From positions 1,798,001 to 1,862,000 of the forward strand of contig BQFW01000012.1 of the NCBI GenBank assembly GCA_020891255.1: a stretch of 64,000 bases of DNA, given 5' to 3'. The stretch's first letter is position 1; each line of letters opens with the position of its first letter. Below, in pieces: positions 39,600 to 52,286 of the stretch. The notes beneath the pieces were generated by a model that saw only the letters and a list, made by a program, of their open reading frames with translations, was not told the origin of the DNA and did no database searches. The position numbers and the translations under genes were made by a program. Origin of the DNA: Entomortierella parvispora E1425 (Eukaryota > Fungi > Mortierellomycota).

Positions 39600-41509
39600 T
39601 TACTGCAACTTCTTGGACTTCTCCTGGGCAGCGGCGGCCTTGGCAGCCTTGGCAGCCTTGGCGTTCTTTCTGTAGAAGTTGTAGAAAAGACCGAGCATGG
39701 TCCACATGTAGAACCAGAGGAGGGCGGTGATGAAGAAGGGGTATCCGGGACGTCCGAGGACCTTCATGGCATACATGTCCCAGGAAGACTGGATGGACAT
39801 CATGCAGAACTGGGTCATTTGCGAACGAGTAATGTAGAACTTGACGAAAGAAACCTGCTTGAATCCCAAGGCAGACAAGAAGTAGTATCCGTACATGATG
39901 ACGTGGATGAACGAGTTCAAGGCAGCAGAGAAGTAGGCTAGGAGTGGAAAGAAGCAATAGGTTAGCAAAAGAATGACTTTCCATTAACATCGTTAGATGA
40001 GAAGGCACTGTCCATCCTGCCGCTGTTTTTCTTTTTAACATACCTTCACCGTTGGGGGCAATGAAGGTGACCAACCACCAGATGGCAAAGATAGAGCTGT
40101 GATGGTAGACGTGCAAGAAAGAAATCTGGCGGTTGTTCTTCTTCACGACCATGATCATGGTATCCACGAACTCCATGATCTTGGAAAAGTAAAAGAGCCA
40201 AATCATCTTGGCCATCTAGAAAACGCCAGAAAAAGGACATGGTAAAAGGTCGAATTGGGTCAGTATACTATCTCAAGAGGGCATGGGTTCTCTTTGTTGA
40301 AAAGGACGCTTCCTTGCTCTTCATGAGCAATCAGCCCATCCCGCCCCTTGAAAATGACGAAAGGTGTCGAATGTTGCCACCGCAATAGACCCCAGGAGGT
40401 ACAAACAACAGTGTTTGTTCTCCCGTTTGTCATGAAAATTCCGAGCTGAAAATCTGATCCGTGGTTTTGGTTAGGGCCTTTGAGCTTTGGCCCCCCGTGT
40501 CGTAAAACACCGCATGCGCCTCCCTTTCCCCCCTTGGAGGTGTCGTTGCAGGAATTCAGGTGTCAACGGCCCATGAAGAAAACACAGAAAAAAAAAAATA
40601 TTGCCGTGGGCAGTGGCGCGCTGGAACGACTCTATTGGCCAGCGTCTGTTGTAGGACAGTCAGACCCCTGTCCCCTTAGTCGCTTTTTGTCCAGTCAGGC
40701 ACAGTTCCCGAATCGGCTTGTTCCTGATAGCAAAATGCAAGGAGGGTGTTGTCCCTCCCAGAGATCGGTAGACAATCACTCCTCCTGATAGAGTGAAGAA
40801 GTTCTTCAAAGCGAACGCTCAGTTTTCTTTCCTTGTCCTCGGTAGCTGAGTCCCTGCATTCCCGAACTGTCTTCCCCCACGAAAAAACAATAACAATTGT
40901 ATCCTCCGATACCATATATAAAACTCAAAAAGAACAGGCACCGAACCTGCTCAACAAACGTTCCCAGGTCTCCAGGGCGAGAGGTAGGACCGATTCAGAG
41001 CAAAAAGGAAAAACGAAAGGAGAAACAAAAAAAAAAAAAAGGCAAAAAGAAAATAAACTTACAGGGAAACCCTTGCTGGTGTGATCGGCCAAGTTCTCAA
41101 AGAGAGTGTAGTTGGACTGGTAAGCCTCAAAGAGGATGCCTCCGCACATGTAGGCACTGATCGAGACCAGGCAGAAGTTGTGGAAGAGCGAGAAGGTCTT
41201 GACCTCGAAGCGCTCAAAGTTCTTCATGATCTGCATGCCGACAAAGATGGTGATCAGGTAAGCGAGCACGATCAAGAGGACGTGGAAGGGGTTCATAAGA
41301 GGCAATTCCGCGACCAAGGGGGACTCGACTGCAACCATAAATCCACGGTAGTGGTGGACCAAGGTAGGGAAGTAGGTCTCCATCTGAGCAGCGAGGGCGT
41401 CCTCGAGGGGATCGACATAGGGAGCAGCCCGGACACCAAAGGCCCTGGCAAAGTCGATGAAGAGATCCTGTGGCATCTTGGATGGGAGGTACTGTGCGAT
41501 CGACTCCAT
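39600..41509 (-). CDS. GLELO: Delta-6 PUFA elongase (GLELO-type, ELO family)
   Basis: Exons 41509-41063, 40215-40044, 39937-39600. ELO motifs KIMEFVDT, FLHVYHH, HVIMYGYY, TRSQMTQF. N-terminus MESIAQYLPSKMPQDLF closely matches M. alpina GLELO as recalled. Confidence 0.93.
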
Positions 41510-42378
41510 TTCGAAACGAATGAGAAGAGGACAGGGGGGAGAAGGAATGAGGTGGAGGAGAGAGGGAGAAAGAGAAAAGAGAAAAAGACCAACAAGAAAA
41601 CAGAAAACCGAAGAGGTGCAGATTGCAGGTGCAGTGCAATTGACGACCAACATAACAACAATAATAACAGAGGCAGAAAGGTCTTGCTGAGCTGCCGCTC
41701 TGGGCCCCTCGGCGGTCTTCCAGGCCGAGGGATCTGTCGAGGGAGGAGCTCGCTCCCCCACGAAATCGAGCCCATTGGCAGAGTTGCATTTGTGCTGACT
41801 GTTGCGATATGTCCGCCAAGGTGGAAAGTCGCAAAAGTGACCGAGCGGGAAAGAAGGTTTTTCTTCCCTCCCTTCTCCTCTCCTTAGAAAAGCACAGGGC
41901 AAAAAAATGTTTGTACTGCTGTCGTGCATGCAGAAATACGACACTCGCTGCTCACATGGAGCAGGCAAAGAACCAGGTCCTCGGGTCCTTCCTTTGGACG
42001 GGAAGAGGGCAAAACGTGCTGGACTTTGGAGTGGAGTGACGAGCTGAAAAACATAAAAATCTGCGTGCACTGCCGACACATGCTGCAGCGTCTGACCGTT
42101 CGCTTTTGCCCCCTTGTTCCCGTCGGTGGCAAACACACCGCTCACACCCTCGCACACTTACACACGAATGCTCACCCCTTTCTCGAAAGATTGAGACGTA
42201 AATGATTTATGAATAACAAAAGAGACAACAATGTGAGAAAACAACAACGAACAAACAATGAACAGCAACTCGTTAAACTGGCGGGGGGGGGGGGGATAAA
42301 AAGATCCAACATTAACAGAGAAACGTATGCAGAGAATGAAAGACTGGACGAACGAGCGAAAGAGTGAGAACAACTCAC

Positions 42379-44636
42379 TCATGATTTTGTCGTTGCGGTG
42401 TATTCGCTTGTCCTGAATACATCCTTGTGTTTTTTGGATCGTGACGAGGATGCTTTCGAGTGAGTATCATCCGCAACAACGGGAATATGGGGCATCCACG
42501 TCAATGGTTTGGGCGCCGGTTCTTGTTTTGGCTCTTGTTTCGCAGCTCCGTTTGGGGTCGTCGTTCCGTTCGTGGCGGGTGCAACTGTCGTTGCAGGAGT
42601 TGACTTTGAAGACGGTGCAGTTTGTGGAAGGGCCTTTGTTTGGCTGTTCTCGCCCTCTGGATCAACAGTCGTGTCTGTCCCCACTTCTGCCTCCTCATCC
42701 GCATCAGTGTTCTTTTCCTCTTGAGACCGATCCTCGCCTGTCCGGCCCTTCTTACGCTTCTCATACCACTGATGTTTCCGTTCTTTGTTCTTGAGCGACC
42801 CCAATTCCTTGGACAGATTCGCCCTTTCAACTTCCACGCGGTTCAAATTCTCGCGCGCCTCCGCGGCCTCTGCCTCCCACGTCTTGGGCCGTGCAGCCTT
42901 GTTTTCATTGGACTCAATCTTCAGCAAAAGGTCTAGGATATGGTCGCGTTCCTTGTTCTTTTGGTTGTAATGCTCGTTCAGGGACGCGATGCGTCGGATC
43001 CGGATCGAGGCGGCGTTCGAAGCATTGGCTTCTCTCTTCATGATCAGTTGTTCCTTGCTGATCTTGGTCTCCTTCTTTGGTGTCATCTCGGGCAGCTTTG
43101 AGCGAGACCGACCACGCTTGTAATCATAGTCTTCCTCCAAGAGCTTCGCCTTTGCCTTGTTCCAGAGGTTTCCTTTATGTGACAACAGTGTGGGATCTTC
43201 CAATGCAAGTGTCTGAGCTGCACAATTGATGGCGTGTTCATATTTCGTCAGTTGTCGAGAAGAGTGCTTTCCATATACCAATGCCTGATGCAAGATCATT
43301 TCCCGAGTAGCAGGGTCCAAATGTGCTCCTCCAACTGCCTTTGGCGTGCTACTCCAAGAAGATGAAGAGTTAGAGTTGTACGAGCTTGGCTCTGGTAGAA
43401 CGGGTGACGACGATGGGTCTCCGACAGCGGTGGGGGGCGACTCTGTTGATCTTCTCCTCTTGATGCCATGCTTGTGTTCGTTTTGCTATTGTCCACACAG
43501 CGACAAATAAAAAAAAAAATAAAAAAAATAAAAAAAACACGTCCTGGATCAGCGTCTGGGCACAGACAAAAAAAAAGAGACCTAACCGAGATTACAAAAT
43601 CAAATATCTCAAGACCTACGCTGTTTGACAGAGTTCTTTGAACGGGCGGATGTTCCTGACTGAACAGTGGTACGGGCTGAGGATGGTAGTAGCCGGAAGG
43701 CACGCGTGCAACCCCTCCAGCATGTTGGTAGATGGCTCCACCTGACAAAACCTGTGATGGTGTTGGTAGAGTTGGTCCTCCTGGTTGACCTGACGAGCTG
43801 TTTCCTTGTGAAGATGACCAATGGCCCCCTATCCTGGATGATGGCTGACGGTGAAGATTTGAGGGCTGACCATTCTGCAGATGCGATTGACTGTATCGCC
43901 GAGTGGGTTGAGAGTTGGGCGCATTCTGGGAGGGGTGGGAGTTTTGCGACTGTTGCGAAGGCGGCTGCGACGAGAGTTGTGGGGGCAGCTGAGGCTGCGA
44001 CGGTTGTTGAAAGAACTGTGAGTGAGAGTAATGAAGCTTACTGTGTGGTTCCGCATGCATGAATGAACTCTGGGAATTGTCAAAGTGCATAGATCCCATC
44101 CGTGAACGCTCGCGTAGGTCGCGCACTCCCATCCGAAAGGTCGCGGCGTGGAAGGGCTTCATTGGGATAGCGTCCATGATACTCTTCAGCTCGTCGTCAT
44201 CAAAGTCGAGAATCAGGGGCATCGCGTCGTCTGCCGCTCCTGCTTCGTTGAACGACTGAAGATACTGGGACAGGTTGCAATTGTTCAGGAAGGCGGGCAG
44301 CGTGGGTATCTCTGAGAAGGGCACAAAGCTGCTGTTGTGCCTCCGGAGTGCCTCTGGTACATGAAGCTGTCTTGGTTCCGAGTGGCCATTTTGGTGTAGA
44401 TGCCCAGAGGCACCAGTATCGTACGCTGCAGGGGGTGCAACCATATAGGACCCACGACTAGGGCGAGACTCGTATGGTGGCGTCGGCGTGGGAGAGCGCG
44501 TGGGCGGTTGTTGCTCGTCGTTTGAGTCGAACTCGGGGTCAGAGGGGATAATGGGCGAGGTGATATCCTCGGCAGACTCTGAAGGGGCCTCTGCAGAGCC
44601 GGCGCCGTTGGCGAGGCTCCGGTGGTGTGACGACAT
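42379..44636 (-). CDS. NAB-like protein: SAM-like NCD1 region, Q/S/P-rich linker, NCD2-like region, coiled coil
   Basis: Exons 44636-43620 and 43485-42379, phase 0, in frame, about 707 aa. Basic NLS-like KRRR. The domain call rests on remembered NAB1/2 sequences (see findings). Confidence 0.75.
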
Positions 44637-45617
44637 TGTGCGCAGATGTCGGAGACGGTAGCTAGCAGGATGATCGAACTTGATTGCAGAGGAGAGGGAG
44701 AGAAAGAACAACAGTCGGTTCCTGATTGCACTGTTGCAGTCAAAGAGAGAAAGGGTGAAAGAGTGAGAATAAGACAAGGTCAAGCGAGGCCGAGAAAGTG
44801 ACCGCGAGGGGGATGGAAGGGCTGGCAGAAAGAGAAGAGATCACTGCAGGCAGCAGACAGGGCAAGCGGGCAGGCGGGAAGGTGGGCGAAGGAAAAAGAG
44901 AGGAGGAAGGGAAGGAAGGGAAGGGAAGGGAAGGGAAGGGGGACGGGGAGGGGATGGGCGCTCTCTGGCTCTCTGAATAATGGTGTCTGTTGCCCTTCTC
45001 TCCCTTCCTTTTTGGACGGATTGCGTCAAACGGGGTGTCCCTGTCGATTGGTGGCGGTGGCTTGCATTCTCCATTCCTCCATCGTCATCAACGGTTTGTA
45101 TGATCGAGAGCGATATTTTTTTCTTGAGTCCCTGTGTGTGTTTGTCTTTGCGTGGTTTGTCTGTTCGGTCTTCGACTATGGTCTATCCTTCATTGTCTAT
45201 GTCTGTCTATGCATCAACTTGACTATTCCGTGATGGTTCGTCCTTGGGACCATAGGATTTTCATTCTGCTGTGCTCTTTTGATTTGTAAGTCCTTTATCC
45301 GTCTGCCTGTCTTGAAATATCTGGCACCTCTTGTTATCGTTTTGCTATTCGGGGCAGAGGTGCCCTCTACACGTTCTTCAGACGACTCAAGAAGGGAAGA
45401 TGTGAGAGAGGATGATAAAAGGCTGTATCCTTGTTCGCGAAGGTTCCCACTCCATACCCGTCTTGTGCAGCACCCAAATCAACATGCTCAGTTTAAAATG
45501 CAGTCACGAAGTTTTCCGGGCGCGATCTTCGTCAGTCATCAAGGGCCAAGGCCCTGTTCATTCGTTTTCGCTACACCCACACGCACGTATATCCTACACA
45601 AGGACACTTTACTCAAG

Positions 45618-46932: not shown

Positions 46933-48162
46933 ATGTTCTTCCTGGTACGACATCCGGTGACATGTGTTGCTTGACCGTCCGAACATGTCAACGCATTCAA
47001 TGAATGCGTCATGCTCATATCTACAGAGCTAATTGTTTATGACTTTGGCACTGATTATCGTTCATTGAAACTTCTTTCCCTCCCTCCCTTCTTGATGACT
47101 CTCTTTCACCTGGGCGTCGGAACTCCTTGGCTAACTGAATCGTTTCCTTACACGGACTTGGCCTATATGTCATAACCTTCTTTGGCGACTATCATATATC
47201 AACTACGAAACACGATCCAACTCGACCCAAACAACAAACAACAGCGCAACTTGTCACACACGATCAACCTTCACCCGTCCTACTATGGACCTCACATGAA
47301 GGAGTTCCTGTTGAGGAACCTGCATGGAGATGTGGAGGGTACCTGCTCTGGAAAGGTCGGATTCATCATTTGTGTGTTGACAGTAACGAACATTAGTCCA
47401 GGAAAGGTCTTGCCCGGCTCTGGTTTGGCCGAGTTTGTTGTCCAATACCAGGCCATTGTCTTCAAGCCTTACAAGGGAGAGGTTGTTGACGCCATCGTGA
47501 CCAGTGTGAACCAGGTATATAGAGACGGGGCTGTTCAGGGATAATAGAAGGCTGGAAGATCTATTTGGGTGTCGACAATCCCGGGAAGAAGTAAAAATTC
47601 GAGAAAACAAACGTTGAGATGGAGCATTCAAGTCGACTGACTCTTTTTTTTTTTTCGTCTTCGAAAACTAGATCGGATTCTTTGCCGATGTTGGACCCCT
47701 TCAAGTCTTTGTCGCTCAAAAGGTACAATTTGATCTGGACAACTCCCGTTTCATTGACCGAGAGATTGTGGATCGCTGGCCGCTTCTTGATTGCTTTAAT
47801 GACATGCCTAGTTAACTTTTTTTTGTCCTCCCTTTCATCGTTTGTAGTTGATGCCCAACGAATTCAAATTTGACTCGAACGGACCTTGCTACAGAGGAGA
47901 AGATCAGACCATTGAAAAGAATGGTCAAGTACGGCTCAAGATTGTGGGTTTGAAGCACCAAGCAACACAGATTGTATGTTTCCCTTTCTTTCTTATGCAA
48001 CAGGCCCCCTGTCATGCCCTGTCATGCGCCATGGAATGTTTCCCCAGTGGTCTAATGTCTTGCTAAAAAAACTAAAATGGTTGTATGCGCCTTTTCTCTC
48101 TCTCTCTCTGATAGAATGCGGTGGGAACGATAAAGGAGGATTACTTGGGCCAGATCCAATAA
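46933..48162 (+). CDS. RPB7: RNA polymerase II subunit Rpb7
   Basis: Exons 46933-46944 (MFFL), 47245-47514, 47672-47722, 47848-47973, 48115-48162. LHPSYYGPHM, VEGTCSGKVGFII, FKPYKGEVVDAIV, GFFADVGPLQVFV, GTIKEDYLG. Confidence 0.96.
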
Positions 48163-48321: not shown

Positions 48322-49669
48322 TCAATCCACGTATATCATAAGCTTGCCACCACTACGGTCAATGGCGACGCGGACATCGCCATCATTCTGAAGGGGGGCA
48401 AAATCACCACGATCGTTGCGGTAGCTCAACTCCTTCTGCTCCGTGTTGAGACGCTCAAAAACCTTTTGCTGAAGAGATCGGAAGGTGATCGCGACCGGTA
48501 TCCTCATGGCCATGATATCATCCTGATAACTAATCTTGATCTTGATCATTTCCTCATTGCTACCGGGGATGCTAATGGCCGAAGATTGGAATGTAGACTG
48601 AGATCGTAGACTGGGTGACGAGCTGGCAGTTCCCATATCTTCTCCATAAGAGCGAAGGCCAGAGGATGAGGATCCTTGCTGCAATGACTTTGAGGCGTAC
48701 ATGGCTCTAGGTCCTGCAGAATGGGAGGGTCTCCGGTCCGAAATGGCCGAAGAGTGGAACATGGGGCTAGAAGGTGTCGAGCGACCCATCATGGCCGATC
48801 CTGGCATGTTTCCATTGTTGCTATGACCGTTGCCGTTGGATCCTGGTCCCGTCTCTGTATCTCCATCTCGTAAGGCAAAGAGTTGATCAACAAGAGGGTG
48901 GTGGAGGATTCTCCTTGGAAGTCTGCAGAGATCCTGAACGTACTCGTTCAAATCCACCTTGCGAGAGGCCGAAACAGAGTCGTCGACAACCTGGAGCGGC
49001 ATTGGCATGAAGGGCAAGATTCGGGGTTGATCACCAACCCTGCCAGATTCCACGGGGAACTCCTCCAGAAGCGCAATGTGAAAGTTGTAAAAGTCTTCGT
49101 ACAGGCGGAGCAAATTCCTGTTTGCTCCATCAGACATTTCAGCCTTGACAGTGAACCAGTACTGATCGTCCTCGTGGTGGAAGGAATCGACAGAGGCATA
49201 CACCAATTGCGCAAAAGATTCCTCTGCGATCTCTCCATGGTCATATCCGTCATGCCGACTTGAAACAGGCGTAGAGGTGCTGCCTCTGGACATGTCATCG
49301 CGTCCGTTCTATTGTTGGATTTGGGTACAAATTGAGTCAGTTTTTCTTTGAATATGGGCTGCAGTAAATGCCTGTTTTTTTTAGCCCAAAAAAAAGAGAG
49401 TCTCGGGCAGTCCTTACCATACGGCGTCCAATGTCTTCTTGAGAAGCAAGTCGGCGAAGAGGCTCGCGTTGCTGTTGCGATTTCATATCCCTGGACATTT
49501 TGTTCTTGAGCTGCTGGATGGTGGGGCCAGAGTTTTGGCTCGAGAACTGTTGTGGGTGGATTGGCAGTTGAGGCGAAGGCATGCCCATAGACTGATGGGG
49601 GTGATATTGCTGCTGGGGCTGTAGTTGCTGCTGCTGCTGCTGCTGCTGCTGGAGTTGTTGTTGTTGTTG

Positions 49670-49700
<31 letters not shown>

Positions 49701-50509
49701 TGTTGCTGAACGGCTTCGTTAGAGTCAATTCGTCCAAGAGGAATACTGTTGGCTTTGTACTCCATTGTCTGCTTCTTCCATTCCTCGACGCGAGGAATGG
49801 CTGTTCCCGTCTGACGGAGAAACTCCTGGACGTTAATGGGCTTTCCTGTAACCATGTCTCTGATCTCCACAAAACTGACAGGGATCAAACCTGGGCCACC
49901 CAGGCGACCGATCGGCTTGGCCACATACCACTCCTCATTCGACTGAGCAATCACCAAGATGGCATCGCCCACCTTGGCATCCAGCTCGTCTGGACGCTCT
50001 GCACCAAAGTCGTAGAGGACAATACCATACAAGGGCTGGCACTTTGGAAGGGGCTTTTGCGCAGGGATAGGGGACGCTGCGGCCGCCACAATAGGGATTG
50101 GTTGTGACTGAAGAGGGTGTTGCGGTTGCTGGTACTGTTGCTGCTGCTGGTAAAACTGTTGCTGCCCCTGCTGATTATGATCGTTCTCGTGCACATTGTC
50201 ATCGAGACTCTGGTTGCTGTTCCGATGACTCTTCTCCAGGATCTGAAAGTAGGTCACTGGGACGTAACCTCGGGCGCCAGTGACGGGATTGCATGCCTCG
50301 TACCAGTCCTCGTCATCCTCATTGCCGACGACATGGAAAAAGTCGCCCTTGGTGAAGGAGAGCTCCTCGGTCTGCTGTGAATTGTAGTCGTAAAGAGCCT
50401 TGATAACCTTGCGAGGAGGGGCGAGGGCGGCGGGCCCGACTCGATTGGGGTTGGGAGAGAGTCCACCAGAACTGTTCTTGGTTTGGAGCGATCGTCGAAG
50501 ATTCTGCAT
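48322..50509 (-). CDS. BEM1: Polarity scaffold Bem1/Scd2 (SH3-SH3-PX-PB1)
   Basis: Exons 50509-49418 and 49308-48322. SH3 (ALYDY...ELSF...GYVP), SH3 (VLYDFGAERPDEL...GPGLIPVSF), PX (RLYEDFYNFHIALLEEFP), PB1 (IKIKISYQDDIMAMRI). Confidence 0.95.
49625..49708 (-). repeat. (CAG)/(CAA) trinucleotide tract encoding poly-Q in Bem1
   Basis: gctg and gttg runs on the + strand, between the second SH3 and the PX domain. Confidence 0.95.
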
Positions 50510-52286
50510 CTGGGTGGGTTGCTCTAAAAGACTGGGTGCAGAAGAAAGGAGAGGGGAGGTGAAAGAGAAGAGAAGGGCTTTTGCGCAGTGGAGAGGAGAG
50601 AAGAGGAAGAGAAGAGGAAGAGAGGGGGGATTGAGAGAAGAGAGGGGAGCAGATGATGATGGAACGAGACGATGGAAGGAAAGAGGAGCGAGCAAAGGGA
50701 ACAGCGCACAGAAACACAAATTAGGGAGGGAAAAAAGAGAAAAAAAAGCAGCGAGATTGTTTATGGCCGAACGGGCGGGTGGATTGTGCGACAGGCAAGC
50801 AAGAAAAAAGAGTCGGTGCTCTCTGCTGTCTGGCTGTCTGTCTGTCTGGCTGCATGTCTGTCTGGCCATCTCTCTGTCCTCTTTCTTGTCTGTCCCCCTT
50901 TCTGTCTCGTCGCCGTTCTTCGCTCTCACTCTTCCGTGGGTGTCACCCTCGCCCGAAGAACAAGAAGCTCTTCAGGGGATGGCAGGCAGAGACACCACGC
51001 TGTCAGGCACGTCCATCCAGACTCTATTTCTTTCAGCTCCCGTGGATCGTCATTCCTCTCTGGCCCAATAGGAGAGGCGCCATCTCAGAAGAGTGCACCC
51101 AACCAATGTCGCCAAGAGCGTACCGTCTTGCTCATGGGAACCTAACGTAGAGATCGGCTTCCACCTGCTAAGAGAGCGAGAGAGCAGCGTTGGGCAGCTA
51201 ACTGGTTATTTACACGAAACATCATGACGTTCAGGGTGCACATCTGCCTTTATCTCTTTGATTCATGCATCCTCTCATATCAGCCGCAATTAGACCGCCC
51301 TTCCTGGCTGGTCCTCTTGTCCCCACACCAATCTGCCCTTCTGGCGTTAGAAGAGGGGGGGCTGAAGGGAAACACCATGGTTAGTCTGTCCATCCGCTGT
51401 GCATCCTGCAGGCTGATAACACGCCGCACTTTGGGGTGCAGAGTGGACATAGTCCACCCATCTCCCTTCTTTCCCCTTGTGTTTGCTCAGCAACTGACTG
51501 GGCTCATCCCCTTGCTCCTTCGCTCCTTTTCAGTTGGACACAGAGATGCGCACCCACACCTCGCGCCTTTTTTTTTTTTACTCGAGCAACCCAGTGTGTT
51601 ATTGCGATCCCTCGCCTGGATCCCAGTCAGTTGCCAGACCACAGGTGCTTTTGGAATTACGGACACAATGAGCGGTCAATGAGGCACTGCTGCTTGCCAG
51701 GTGGGTTCTTTTTGCCTTTTGACCTTTTTCTGTGGGCTGTGCAGAGCGGTCGACTCTGGCGTTGCCTTTTTTTTCTCTAGGACGCGTGCGAGGACAGCGA
51801 GGGAAGTTTTTTTTGCTAGGTTTGGGAGGCAGGGCAGGCGTGAAACTTGTCAATTTTTTTTTTTTTTTTTTTTTTGCCTTTGAATTTCGACTGCATTCGT
51901 ACGTGTCCAACTGCTTGCGCCCACAATGATGACAGCGAGTGAGTGGGTGAGGGACACTCGGCCAGTGGGGGCGAGTTGGCAAGCGAGAAAAGAAGAGATA
52001 TCGATGGCACGGCAGGACAGGACGAGAAGGGACGGAAGGGCGTCAGCATGTTTGCATCCAGCCCCCGTCCAAATCCTCGGCCAGACCAGACAGCACTGCG
52101 ACGGACAGCACTGCGACAGACAGACAGAGAGACAAACACCACGCCAATTGAACCAACATAAAAGGGTGGCGTCTCGACCAACATCCTTCCTGACAAATTC
52201 ACTCTTTTGTATTTTTCGCGCGCTATTCCCTCCCTCTTTCTGTTTTCCCTCCCTCCCCCCCCCCCCCCCCCCAATCGAACAGTGCA

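What the first reader, a model, noticed from the sequence alone, without database searches (positions are those of the whole stretch)
42379..44636. NAB (EGR co-repressor)-like protein with both NCD1- and NCD2-like regions in an early-diverging fungus
Seen: two conserved-looking islands within low-complexity sequence. Island 1 (about 44305-44105) is LPAFLNNCNLSQYLQSFNEAGAADDAMPLILDFDDDELKSIMDAIPMKPFHAATFRMGVRDL. It parallels animal NAB NCD1 as I recall it ([62 protein letters not shown]). Island 2 (about 43310-43100) is ALVYGKHSSRQLTKYEHAINCAAQTLALEDPTLLSHKGNLWNKAKAKLLEEDYDY. It parallels NCD2 (IYGRF...[44 protein letters not shown]). Order and spacing also match. Established: NAB1/2, Drosophila Nab and C. 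elegans MAB-10 bind EGR/LIN-29-type C2H2 factors, and Mig1/CreA zinc fingers resemble those of EGR. Inference: this is an ancestral opisthokont co-repressor module lost from Dikarya, possibly partnering a CreA-like factor. The intron splits the two islands across separate ORFs, so automated annotation could miss the architecture.
Basis: partly seen in the sequence, partly recalled or inferred. Interest (0 to 1): 0.8.

Follow-up and report, generated by a model that had tools for sequence, protein, structure and literature searches.

The report
Fungal NAB-family transcription cofactor gene
This two-exon gene of the soil fungus Entomortierella parvispora encodes a true relative of the animal NAB (EGR-binding) transcription co-repressors, showing the family predates animals, although databases already label its close fungal relatives this way.

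Summary
A minus-strand gene (exon 1 44636-43620, 134-nt GT..AG intron, exon 2 43485-42379) encodes a 707-aa protein. It is letter for letter GenBank's 'hypothetical protein EMPS_08940' of Entomortierella parvispora, so annotation did not miss the architecture.

The NAB reading is supported. The window protein alone is sub-threshold in Pfam (NCD2 E 3e-4, SAM_NCD1 E 0.02). Its orthologues decide the case:
- A profile of them retrieves coral, lamprey, mollusc and sea-urchin NABs at E 1e-14 to 1e-17, in one collinear match.
- Fungal-versus-animal profile comparison gives E 4e-11 for NCD1 and E 1e-20 for NCD2 plus tail.
- The best structural matches of the NCD2 model are human NAB1 NCD2 (2yuf), MAB-10, NAB1/2 and fly Nab.
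- A third shared block follows NCD2: a helical hairpin ending in a basic K-E-R-K-H-Q-W-Y motif.

Homologues were seen in Mortierellomycotina, Glomeromycotina, Mucorales, Umbelopsis, Endogonales, Calcarisporiella, Basidiobolus and the unicellular holozoan Syssomonas. None was seen in Dikarya or chytrids, but absence was not shown.

Novelty is limited. UniProt and NCBI already name several fungal orthologues 'NAB co-repressor domain-containing' or 'NGFI-A-binding protein 1-like'. No paper found discusses them. The partner (a CreA-like factor) and the repression activity are untested.

The parts
42379..44636 (-). Whole coding region of the NAB-like gene (707 aa, plus stop at 42379-42381). It equals GenBank EMPS_08940.
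   Evidence: the spliced translation is identical to P0031.
43620..44636 (-). Exon 1 (residues 1-339): N-terminal Ser/Pro-rich region, the NCD1 SAM domain, and a Q/S/P-rich disordered linker.
   Evidence: In diverged strains the shown indels in the linker sum to 3, so the linker is coding.
44094..44321 (-). NCD1-type SAM domain (residues 106-181), with the family signature M-K-P-F/L-H.
   Evidence: Pfam on this sequence alone: SAM_NCD1 E 0.021, SAM_2 E 0.018. 24 of 29 fungal orthologues hit SAM_NCD1. hhalign against animal NCD1: probability 97.2%, E 4e-11. The AF2 model is a five-helix SAM fold with core pLDDT above 90. Gly and His of the signature are invariant across fungi and animals.
43486..43619 (-). 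Intron of 134 nt: GTAGGT donor, T-rich tract, AATAG acceptor, phase 0.
   Evidence: It carries stops and a frame change. In related strains this interval differs in length by 8, 16 or 20 nt and will not align, while the flanking exons do. No RNA run was available.
42379..43485 (-). Exon 2 (residues 340-707 plus stop).
43093..43317 (-). NCD2 domain (residues 396-470), a four-helix bundle.
   Evidence: Pfam NCD2 E 3e-4 to 1e-3, 19-21 bits against a cut-off of 25. 17 of 20 orthologues hit NCD2. The profile hits PDB 2yuf (NAB1 NCD2) at E 3.2e-5. hhalign on NCD2 alone: E 3.1e-18, against 0.33 for the reversed control. AF2 pLDDT about 95. Foldseek top hits are 2yuf, MAB-10, NAB1, NAB2 and fly Nab.
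42736..43056 (-). Third conserved block (residues 483-589): a long antiparallel helical hairpin. In animals it corresponds to the first half of Pfam PF04902 'Nab1'.
   Evidence: AF2 helices 94-140 and 153-200 have pLDDT above 90. The block is collinear with animal and Syssomonas proteins. hhalign on this block alone: E 7e-5, against 0.041 for the reversed control. The animal block hits PF04902 positions 10-106.
42748..42792 (-). Basic motif KNKERKHQWYEKRKK closing the hairpin. The animal counterpart is K-K-Q-R-R-S-D-R-Y and the Syssomonas one K-R-Q-K-K-S-E-W-Y. It is a candidate nuclear localisation or partner-contact motif.
   Evidence: Nearly invariant in fungi; alignment. The function is inferred.
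42382..42735 (-). C-terminal tail: an acidic TDTTVDPEG stretch, low-complexity sequence, and a basic SRSKKHKDVFRTSEY end. It is conserved only within Mortierellaceae.

Best explanation

Shown:
- The protein has, in the animal order, an N-terminal NCD1-type SAM domain, a four-helix NCD2 domain, and a helical hairpin ending in a basic K-x-E/Q-R-K/R-x-x-W/R-Y motif.
- Long Q/S/P-rich disordered linkers separate these modules.
- The family was inherited vertically in opisthokonts.

Inferred from animal NABs:
- The protein does not bind DNA itself.
- Its NCD1 SAM domain docks onto a sequence-specific, probably C2H2-type, transcription factor and/or self-associates.
- The NCD2 and C-terminal modules then lower or modulate transcription of that factor's targets, possibly by recruiting a CHD/Mi-2-type remodeller.
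- The basic clusters (KRRR, KRKK, SKKHK) direct it to the nucleus.
For: - Gene model: the spliced product is identical to GenBank EMPS_08940. Third-codon substitutions, in-frame linker indels and frame-breaking length changes in the intron of related strains support it.
- Sequence: 17 of 20 orthologues hit Pfam NCD2 and 24 of 29 hit SAM_NCD1.
- Profile search: a fungal-only profile searched against 1.84 billion proteins retrieves animal NABs at E 2e-17 to 1e-13, as one stretch spanning all three blocks. Those animal proteins carry strong Pfam NCD1 and NCD2 domains and NAB names.
- Profile-profile: hhalign fungal versus animal gives NCD1 97.2%, E 4e-11, and NCD2 plus tail 99.3%, E 1.1e-20. Reversed-template controls score 0.33 for the NCD2 slice and 0.041 for the third-block slice; no reversed control was run for NCD1.
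- PDB: the profile's best hit is NAB1 NCD2, 2yuf, at E 3.2e-5.
- Structure: the AF2 model has pLDDT 91. Foldseek places 2yuf first in the PDB and MAB-10, NAB1, NAB2 and fly Nab at the top of Swiss-Prot.
- ESM Atlas feature search: the five best clusters are all NAB/NCD2 clusters.
- Tree: Mortierellomycotina, Glomeromycotina and Mucorales are recovered as clades, animals form a separate clade, and the fungi are not nested inside animals.
- Database names of orthologues: 'NAB co-repressor domain-containing protein' and 'ngfi-a-binding protein 1-like'.
Against: - The window protein by itself is below Pfam's gathering thresholds for both domains.
- Its SAM domain scores no better against NCD1 than against generic SAM_2.
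- The SAM model's best structural matches are generic SAM domains (SASH3, SAMD5, Eph), with no NAB in the top 30.
- All Foldseek E-values for NCD2 are weak (0.045-1.1).
- No expression or splicing data could be found.
- No partner, repression activity, nuclear localisation or CHD4-type contact was tested or is testable here.
- Whether fungi have an EGR R1-like docking motif is unknown.
Confidence: 0.85

Rival explanations
1. It is a NAB homologue by descent but does a different job in fungi. For example, it could be a SAM-polymerising scaffold or condensate former built on its Q/S/P-rich linkers, or a co-activator rather than a repressor. It might not depend on any EGR- or CreA-like C2H2 factor.
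For: Only the domains are conserved (about 20-27% identity to animals). About half of the protein is low-complexity sequence. Animal NABs themselves use different partners in different lineages and can co-activate (my own knowledge). MAB-10 forms nuclear condensates through disordered regions (PMC10584935). The SAM model resembles generic SAM domains.
Against: Three modules stay collinear and conserved over more than a billion years, including the M-K-P-L/F-H signature and the terminal basic motif. This argues for a retained molecular mechanism.
Confidence: 0.25
2. The fungal genes came by horizontal transfer from an animal or another holozoan into an ancestor of Mucoromycota, rather than by vertical descent from the opisthokont ancestor.
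For: The distribution is patchy: no Dikarya or chytrid hit was seen among about 60 named homologues.
Against: Fungal sequences fall on one side of the tree, and their internal clades follow the species groups. A long starred branch sets the animal clade apart from all other rows, and the fungi are not nested in any animal clade. Basidiobolus, outside Mucoromycota, also has the gene. Note that the branch uniting all fungi has weak support (SH-aLRT 16) and the tree is unrooted.
Confidence: 0.05
3. There is no homology to NAB. The protein has a generic SAM domain plus an unrelated helical region, and this produces chance sub-threshold Pfam hits.
For: The single-sequence Pfam hits are under the gathering cut-offs. 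The SAM model matches generic SAM domains best.
Against: Profile-level E-values run from 1e-11 to 1e-20, with clean reversed-template controls for the NCD2 and third-block slices. Both domains are retrieved collinearly in named animal NABs. NAB family members top two structure libraries and the PDB sequence search.
Confidence: 0.02

Closest known systems
Animal NAB co-repressors (mammalian NAB1/NAB2, Drosophila Nab, C. elegans MAB-10)
   Same: The module order is the same: NCD1 SAM domain, NCD2 four-helix domain, then a C-terminal helical region with a basic end. Long disordered linkers separate the modules. Profile E-values are 4e-11 (NCD1) and 1e-20 (NCD2 plus tail). Structure searches put these proteins first.
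   Different: Identity is only about 20-27%. The fungal NCD2 lacks the animal insertion (RFDSKRK...) after I-Y-G-R/K and the first 48 positions of the Pfam model. The terminal motif reads KERKHQWY rather than KQRRSDRY. The fungal block gives no direct PF04902 hit. Partner, repression and any CHD4-interacting region are untested. No EGR-type partner is known in fungi.
Automatically named fungal 'NAB co-repressor domain-containing' / 'NGFI-A-binding protein 1-like' proteins (Linnemannia exigua, Rhizophagus irregularis, Gigaspora margarita, Apophysomyces, Lichtheimia, Absidia, Umbelopsis)
   Same: They are direct orthologues (E 1e-40 to 1e-138) with the same three blocks.
   Different: The E. parvispora entry and most other Mortierellaceae entries are still labelled 'hypothetical' or 'uncharacterized', because their domains fall under Pfam's cut-offs. 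Mortierellaceae proteins are about 700 aa with a much longer Q/S/P linker, against 350-490 aa in Mucorales and Glomeromycotina.
PDB 2YUF, solution structure of the NCD2 domain of human NAB1
   Same: It is the best PDB match by sequence profile (E 3.2e-5) and by Foldseek (probability 0.99, 30% identity over 81 columns).
   Different: TM-scores are low (0.29/0.40) and rmsd is 6.5 A. The comparison is between an NMR ensemble model and a longer predicted model.
Generic SAM-domain proteins (SASH3, SAMD5, Eph receptors)
   Same: The five-helix SAM fold is shared, and these are the best structural matches of the island-1 model.
   Different: They lack the M-K-P-L/F-H signature and are not followed by NCD2. 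Sequence profiles favour NCD1: 24 of 29 fungal members hit SAM_NCD1, against 10 of 29 for SAM_1.

Membership tests
NAB (NGFI-A/EGR-binding) cofactor family | N-terminal NCD1 domain (Pfam PF04904 SAM_NCD1) | tested here: met
   The window sequence alone is inconclusive: E 0.021, 15.2 bits against a cut-off of 24.3. At family level, 24 of 29 fungal orthologues hit SAM_NCD1, best 1e-7. hhalign against animal NCD1 gives 97.2%, E 4e-11. The AF2 model has a SAM fold. The Gly and His of the G...M-K-P-x-H signature are invariant.
NAB (NGFI-A/EGR-binding) cofactor family | NCD2 domain (Pfam PF04905) | tested here: met
   The window sequence scores E 3e-4 to 1e-3, 19-21 bits against a cut-off of 25, covering profile positions 49-125 only. 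17 of 20 orthologues hit NCD2. hhalign gives E 3.1e-18, with a reversed control of 0.33. PDB 2yuf is hit at E 3.2e-5. Foldseek top hits are NAB family members.
NAB (NGFI-A/EGR-binding) cofactor family | Collinear architecture: NCD1, then NCD2, then a C-terminal conserved helical region | tested here: met
   Single-stretch profile matches span positions 9-275 in animal NABs. See also the alignment and hhalign over 180 columns. The third block alone scores E 7e-5 against 0.041 for the control. In animals it overlaps PF04902 positions 10-106.
NAB (NGFI-A/EGR-binding) cofactor family | NCD1 binds an EGR / LIN-29 / Rotund-type C2H2 transcription factor | not testable with these tools
   No multimer prediction or interaction data were available, and no candidate fungal partner was identified.
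NAB (NGFI-A/EGR-binding) cofactor family | Represses transcription through NCD2 and a C-terminal CHD4 (NuRD)-interacting domain | not testable with these tools
   The domain roles come from PMC8230482 and PMC2235890. No mammalian NAB2 sequence was in hand to map the CHD4-interacting domain onto the fungal third block.
NAB (NGFI-A/EGR-binding) cofactor family | Nuclear protein | not tested
   Only basic clusters were seen (GIKRRRS, KRKKGR, SRSKKHK). This is an inference.
Generic SAM-domain scaffold | Five-helix SAM fold | tested here: met
   AF2 model. Foldseek probability is 0.99-1.0 for SASH3, SAMD5 and Eph SAM domains. NCD1 is itself a SAM subfamily, so this does not conflict with NAB membership.

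The most novel reading that the evidence does not exclude
NAB is an ancestral three-module opisthokont cofactor: NCD1 SAM domain, NCD2, and a helical hairpin with a basic W/R-Y motif. In Mucoromycota it still pairs with a C2H2 factor to time developmental switches such as sporulation, dimorphism or symbiosis. It was lost in Dikarya. If so, the animal EGR-NAB negative-feedback logic predates multicellularity, and the conserved third block is a functional module not yet recognised in animal NABs.
Probability: 0.25. Interest if true: 0.6.

Novelty: new member of a known kind. Interest (0 to 1): 0.4.

Why it matters
NAB proteins are studied as animal regulators of EGR factors in myelination, differentiation timing and the NAB2-STAT6 tumour fusion. 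A clear orthologue in Mucoromycota and in a unicellular holozoan dates the family to the opisthokont ancestor.

It also offers genetically tractable fungi (Mucor, Phycomyces, Mortierella) for asking what the NCD1, NCD2 and C-terminal modules do at the molecular level. It highlights a third conserved block shared from fungi to vertebrates.

Practically, the E. parvispora entry and most Mortierellaceae orthologues could be renamed from 'hypothetical protein' to NAB-like.

The gain is modest. Databases already tag several fungal orthologues, so the main point can be read from InterPro, even though no paper found here discusses it.

Tried and rejected
- RNA evidence for the splice: no RNA run was listed. 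The four runs laid on the gene were DNA contigs of the same or diverged strains, so they give only comparative support.
- Structure search of the SAM model against Swiss-Prot did not separate NCD1 from generic SAM domains.
- Direct Pfam scan of the fungal third block against PF04902 gave nothing.
- I tried to place the odd NCD2-only metagenomic protein P0120. Its contig has a Fungal_trans neighbour, but no DNA was served and no relatives were found.
- Literature: no paper on fungal NAB was found in the text searches aimed at it. The only trace is a 2014 domain census that lists NCD2 in fungal proteomes in passing (PMC4102429).
- Harris & Horvitz 2011 (PMC3160099) is not held, so statements on how MAB-10 contacts LIN-29 rest on PMC7105380 and on my own knowledge.
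- The alternative acceptor at 43470 is rejected: it gives 702 aa and does not match GenBank.
- Earlier scan notes offered no EGR- or CreA-like partner.

Full report
**Observation**

They are 43296-44783, with its first ATG at 44636, and 42379-43320.

Exon 1 (44636-43620) ends ...TLSNS before a GTAGGT donor. After a T-rich tract, an AATAG acceptor opens exon 2 at 43485 in phase 0. The spliced protein has 707 residues. It is identical to P0031, 'hypothetical protein EMPS_08940 [Entomortierella parvispora]'. An alternative acceptor at 43470 gives 702 aa and does not match.

**Gene model without RNA**

No RNA run was listed. DNA contigs of the same species label, about 85-97% identical, were laid on the gene. 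They show three things:
- The listed exon 2 substitutions fall on third codon positions (42676, 42682, 42685, 42691 and so on, all one residue class modulo 3).
- The shown indels in the Q/S/P-rich linker of exon 1 sum to three (T+CC; G+T+C; GCT).
- The interval 43488-43581 cannot be aligned, or differs in length by 8, 16 or 20 nt. None of these is a multiple of three.

So the linker is coding and the intron is non-coding. This is comparative support, not proof of splicing.

**Is it NAB? The window protein alone**

By itself the protein is sub-threshold:
- Pfam NCD2: E 3e-4 to 1e-3, 19-21 bits against a cut-off of 25, profile positions 49-125 only.
- Pfam SAM_NCD1: E 0.021, no better than SAM_2 at E 0.018.

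**Is it NAB? Family-level evidence**

- Homologues occur throughout Mortierellaceae and in Glomeromycotina, Mucorales, Umbelopsis and Endogone.
- 17 of 20 homologues hit NCD2 (best 5.8e-6), and 24 of 29 SAM segments hit SAM_NCD1 (best 1e-7). Only 10 hit SAM_1 and 10 hit SAM_2.
- A profile built only from fungal sequences (A3) was scored against 1.84 billion representative proteins. It gave 718 hits at E<=1e-3.
- Among them are proteins of 480-740 aa matched in a single stretch over profile positions about 9-275.
- Ten such proteins were scanned; all carry NCD2 and nine also carry SAM_NCD1. The named animal ones score SAM_NCD1 up to E 6e-46 and NCD2 up to E 9e-52.
- They are named NGFI-A-binding protein 1-like in a coral, lamprey, hagfish, sea urchin and nemertean.
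- Profile-profile comparison of fungal against animal alignments gives 97.2%, E 4e-11 for NCD1. It gives 99.3%, E 1.1e-20 over 180 columns for NCD2 plus tail.
- Sliced, NCD2 alone gives E 3.1e-18, against 0.33 for a reversed template.
- The best PDB sequence match of the fungal profile is 2yuf, the NCD2 domain of human NAB1 (E 3.2e-5). Next come Eph SAM domains at E>0.1.

**Structure**

The AlphaFold2 model of residues 390-592 has mean pLDDT 91.4. It shows a compact four-helix NCD2 followed by a long antiparallel helical hairpin.
- Foldseek ranks 2yuf first in the PDB: probability 0.99, 30% identity over 81 columns.
- In Swiss-Prot, MAB-10, four NAB1, two NAB2 and fly Nab lie among the 17 best.
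- The E-values are weak (0.045-1.1), as expected for a small helical domain.

The SAM model (pLDDT 81, core above 90) is a five-helix SAM fold. Its best matches are generic SAM domains, not NAB, so structure does not discriminate here. What marks the domain as NCD1 is the sequence profile, the conserved M-K-P-L/F-H signature (its Gly and His invariant), and its position upstream of NCD2.

The ESM Atlas feature search also returns NAB/NCD2 clusters as its five best hits.

**A third shared block**

Beyond NCD2, fungi, Syssomonas and animals align through the helical hairpin to a terminal basic motif:
- KNKERKHQWYEKRKK in fungi
- KRQKKSEWYFQRK in Syssomonas
- KKQRRSDRYF in animals

On its own this block gives hhalign E 7e-5 over 80 columns, against 0.041 over 10 columns for the reversed template. 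This is moderate evidence, strengthened by collinearity.

In chordate-type animal proteins the block coincides with positions 10-106 of Pfam PF04902 'Nab1'. The fungal block does not hit that model directly. I could not map the CHD4-interacting domain of NAB2 onto it.

**Distribution and descent**

Named homologues come from:
- Mortierellomycotina, Glomeromycotina and many Mucorales (Mucor, Rhizopus, Phycomyces, Blakeslea, Absidia, Cunninghamella, Lichtheimia and others)
- Umbelopsis, Endogone, Jimgerdemannia, Calcarisporiella and two Basidiobolus species
- the unicellular holozoan Syssomonas multiformis
- animals

No Dikarya or chytrid protein was among the roughly 60 named hits. Only the best 150 of 718 were visible, so absence is not shown.

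One divergent NCD2-plus-hairpin protein without a SAM match (P0120) sits beside a Fungal_trans gene on a metagenome contig of unknown lineage.

A quick maximum-likelihood tree of the NCD2-hairpin region recovers Mortierellomycotina (99), Glomeromycotina (97), Mucorales plus Umbelopsis (81) and animals (96) as groups. Fungi fall on one side and are not nested in animals. The branch uniting all fungi is weak (16), and the tree is unrooted. This favours vertical descent over transfer.

**Mechanism**

Shown: the architecture and the homology.

Inferred from animal NABs:
- NCD1 binds the transcription factor, and NCD2 and the C-terminal CHD4-interacting domain repress (PMC8230482; PMC2235890).
- MAB-10 does not bind DNA but binds LIN-29 (PMC7105380).
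- MAB-10 forms nuclear foci, and its large disordered regions are proposed to drive that condensation (PMC10584935).

On this basis the fungal protein is most likely a nuclear, non-DNA-binding cofactor. It would dock through its SAM domain on a sequence-specific factor and modulate, probably repress, that factor's targets.

**Novelty**

The gene is correctly modelled in GenBank but unnamed. UniProt and NCBI already call several orthologues 'NAB co-repressor domain-containing protein', 'Nab N-terminal domain-containing protein' or 'ngfi-a-binding protein 1-like'. A 2014 census lists NCD2 among domains of fungal proteomes in passing (PMC4102429). No paper found discusses fungal NABs.

It is therefore a new member of a known family, with a modestly interesting evolutionary implication.

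Noticed in passing
Protein P0120 (metagenome contig, JGI sample 3300059473; not in the window): A divergent 481-aa protein has NCD2 plus the hairpin block but no SAM match. It lies next to a PF04082 Fungal_trans gene in a compact gene arrangement. No relatives were found and its lineage is unknown. It may mark a further fungal lineage with a NAB-like gene.
   Followed up: partly
window 42736-43056 (-), motif at 42748-42792: A helical hairpin ends in KNKERKHQWYEKRKK. It is conserved from fungi to vertebrates (KKQRRSDRYF) and Syssomonas. It is only partly covered by Pfam PF04902, and none of the papers read here lists it among the NAB modules.
   Followed up: partly
window about 44480-44560 (-), and 42382-42480 (-): Three short motifs are conserved only within Mortierellaceae: an N-terminal SPIIPSDPEFDSNDEQQPPTRSPTP, an acidic TDTTVDPEG, and a C-terminal SRSKKHKDVFRTSEY.
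   Followed up: no
Proteins P0006 and P0007 (Linnemannia MAG gene models): These models splice out the whole Q/S/P-rich linker between NCD1 and NCD2 (401-477 aa, against about 670 aa in other Linnemannia entries). In the window the linker is open in frame, and the indels shown for related strains are in frame. The short models are probably mispredictions.
   Followed up: partly
window 40925-41590 (-): The downstream neighbour begins with an ELO (GNS1/SUR4) fatty-acid elongase exon (Pfam E 1.2e-11).
   Followed up: partly
window 47182-47544 (+) and 48322-50929 (-): By eye only: an Rpb7/Rpc25-like ORF, and a long Q-rich protein with SH3-like and PB1-like parts that resembles Bem1/Scd2. No search was run on either.
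   Followed up: no
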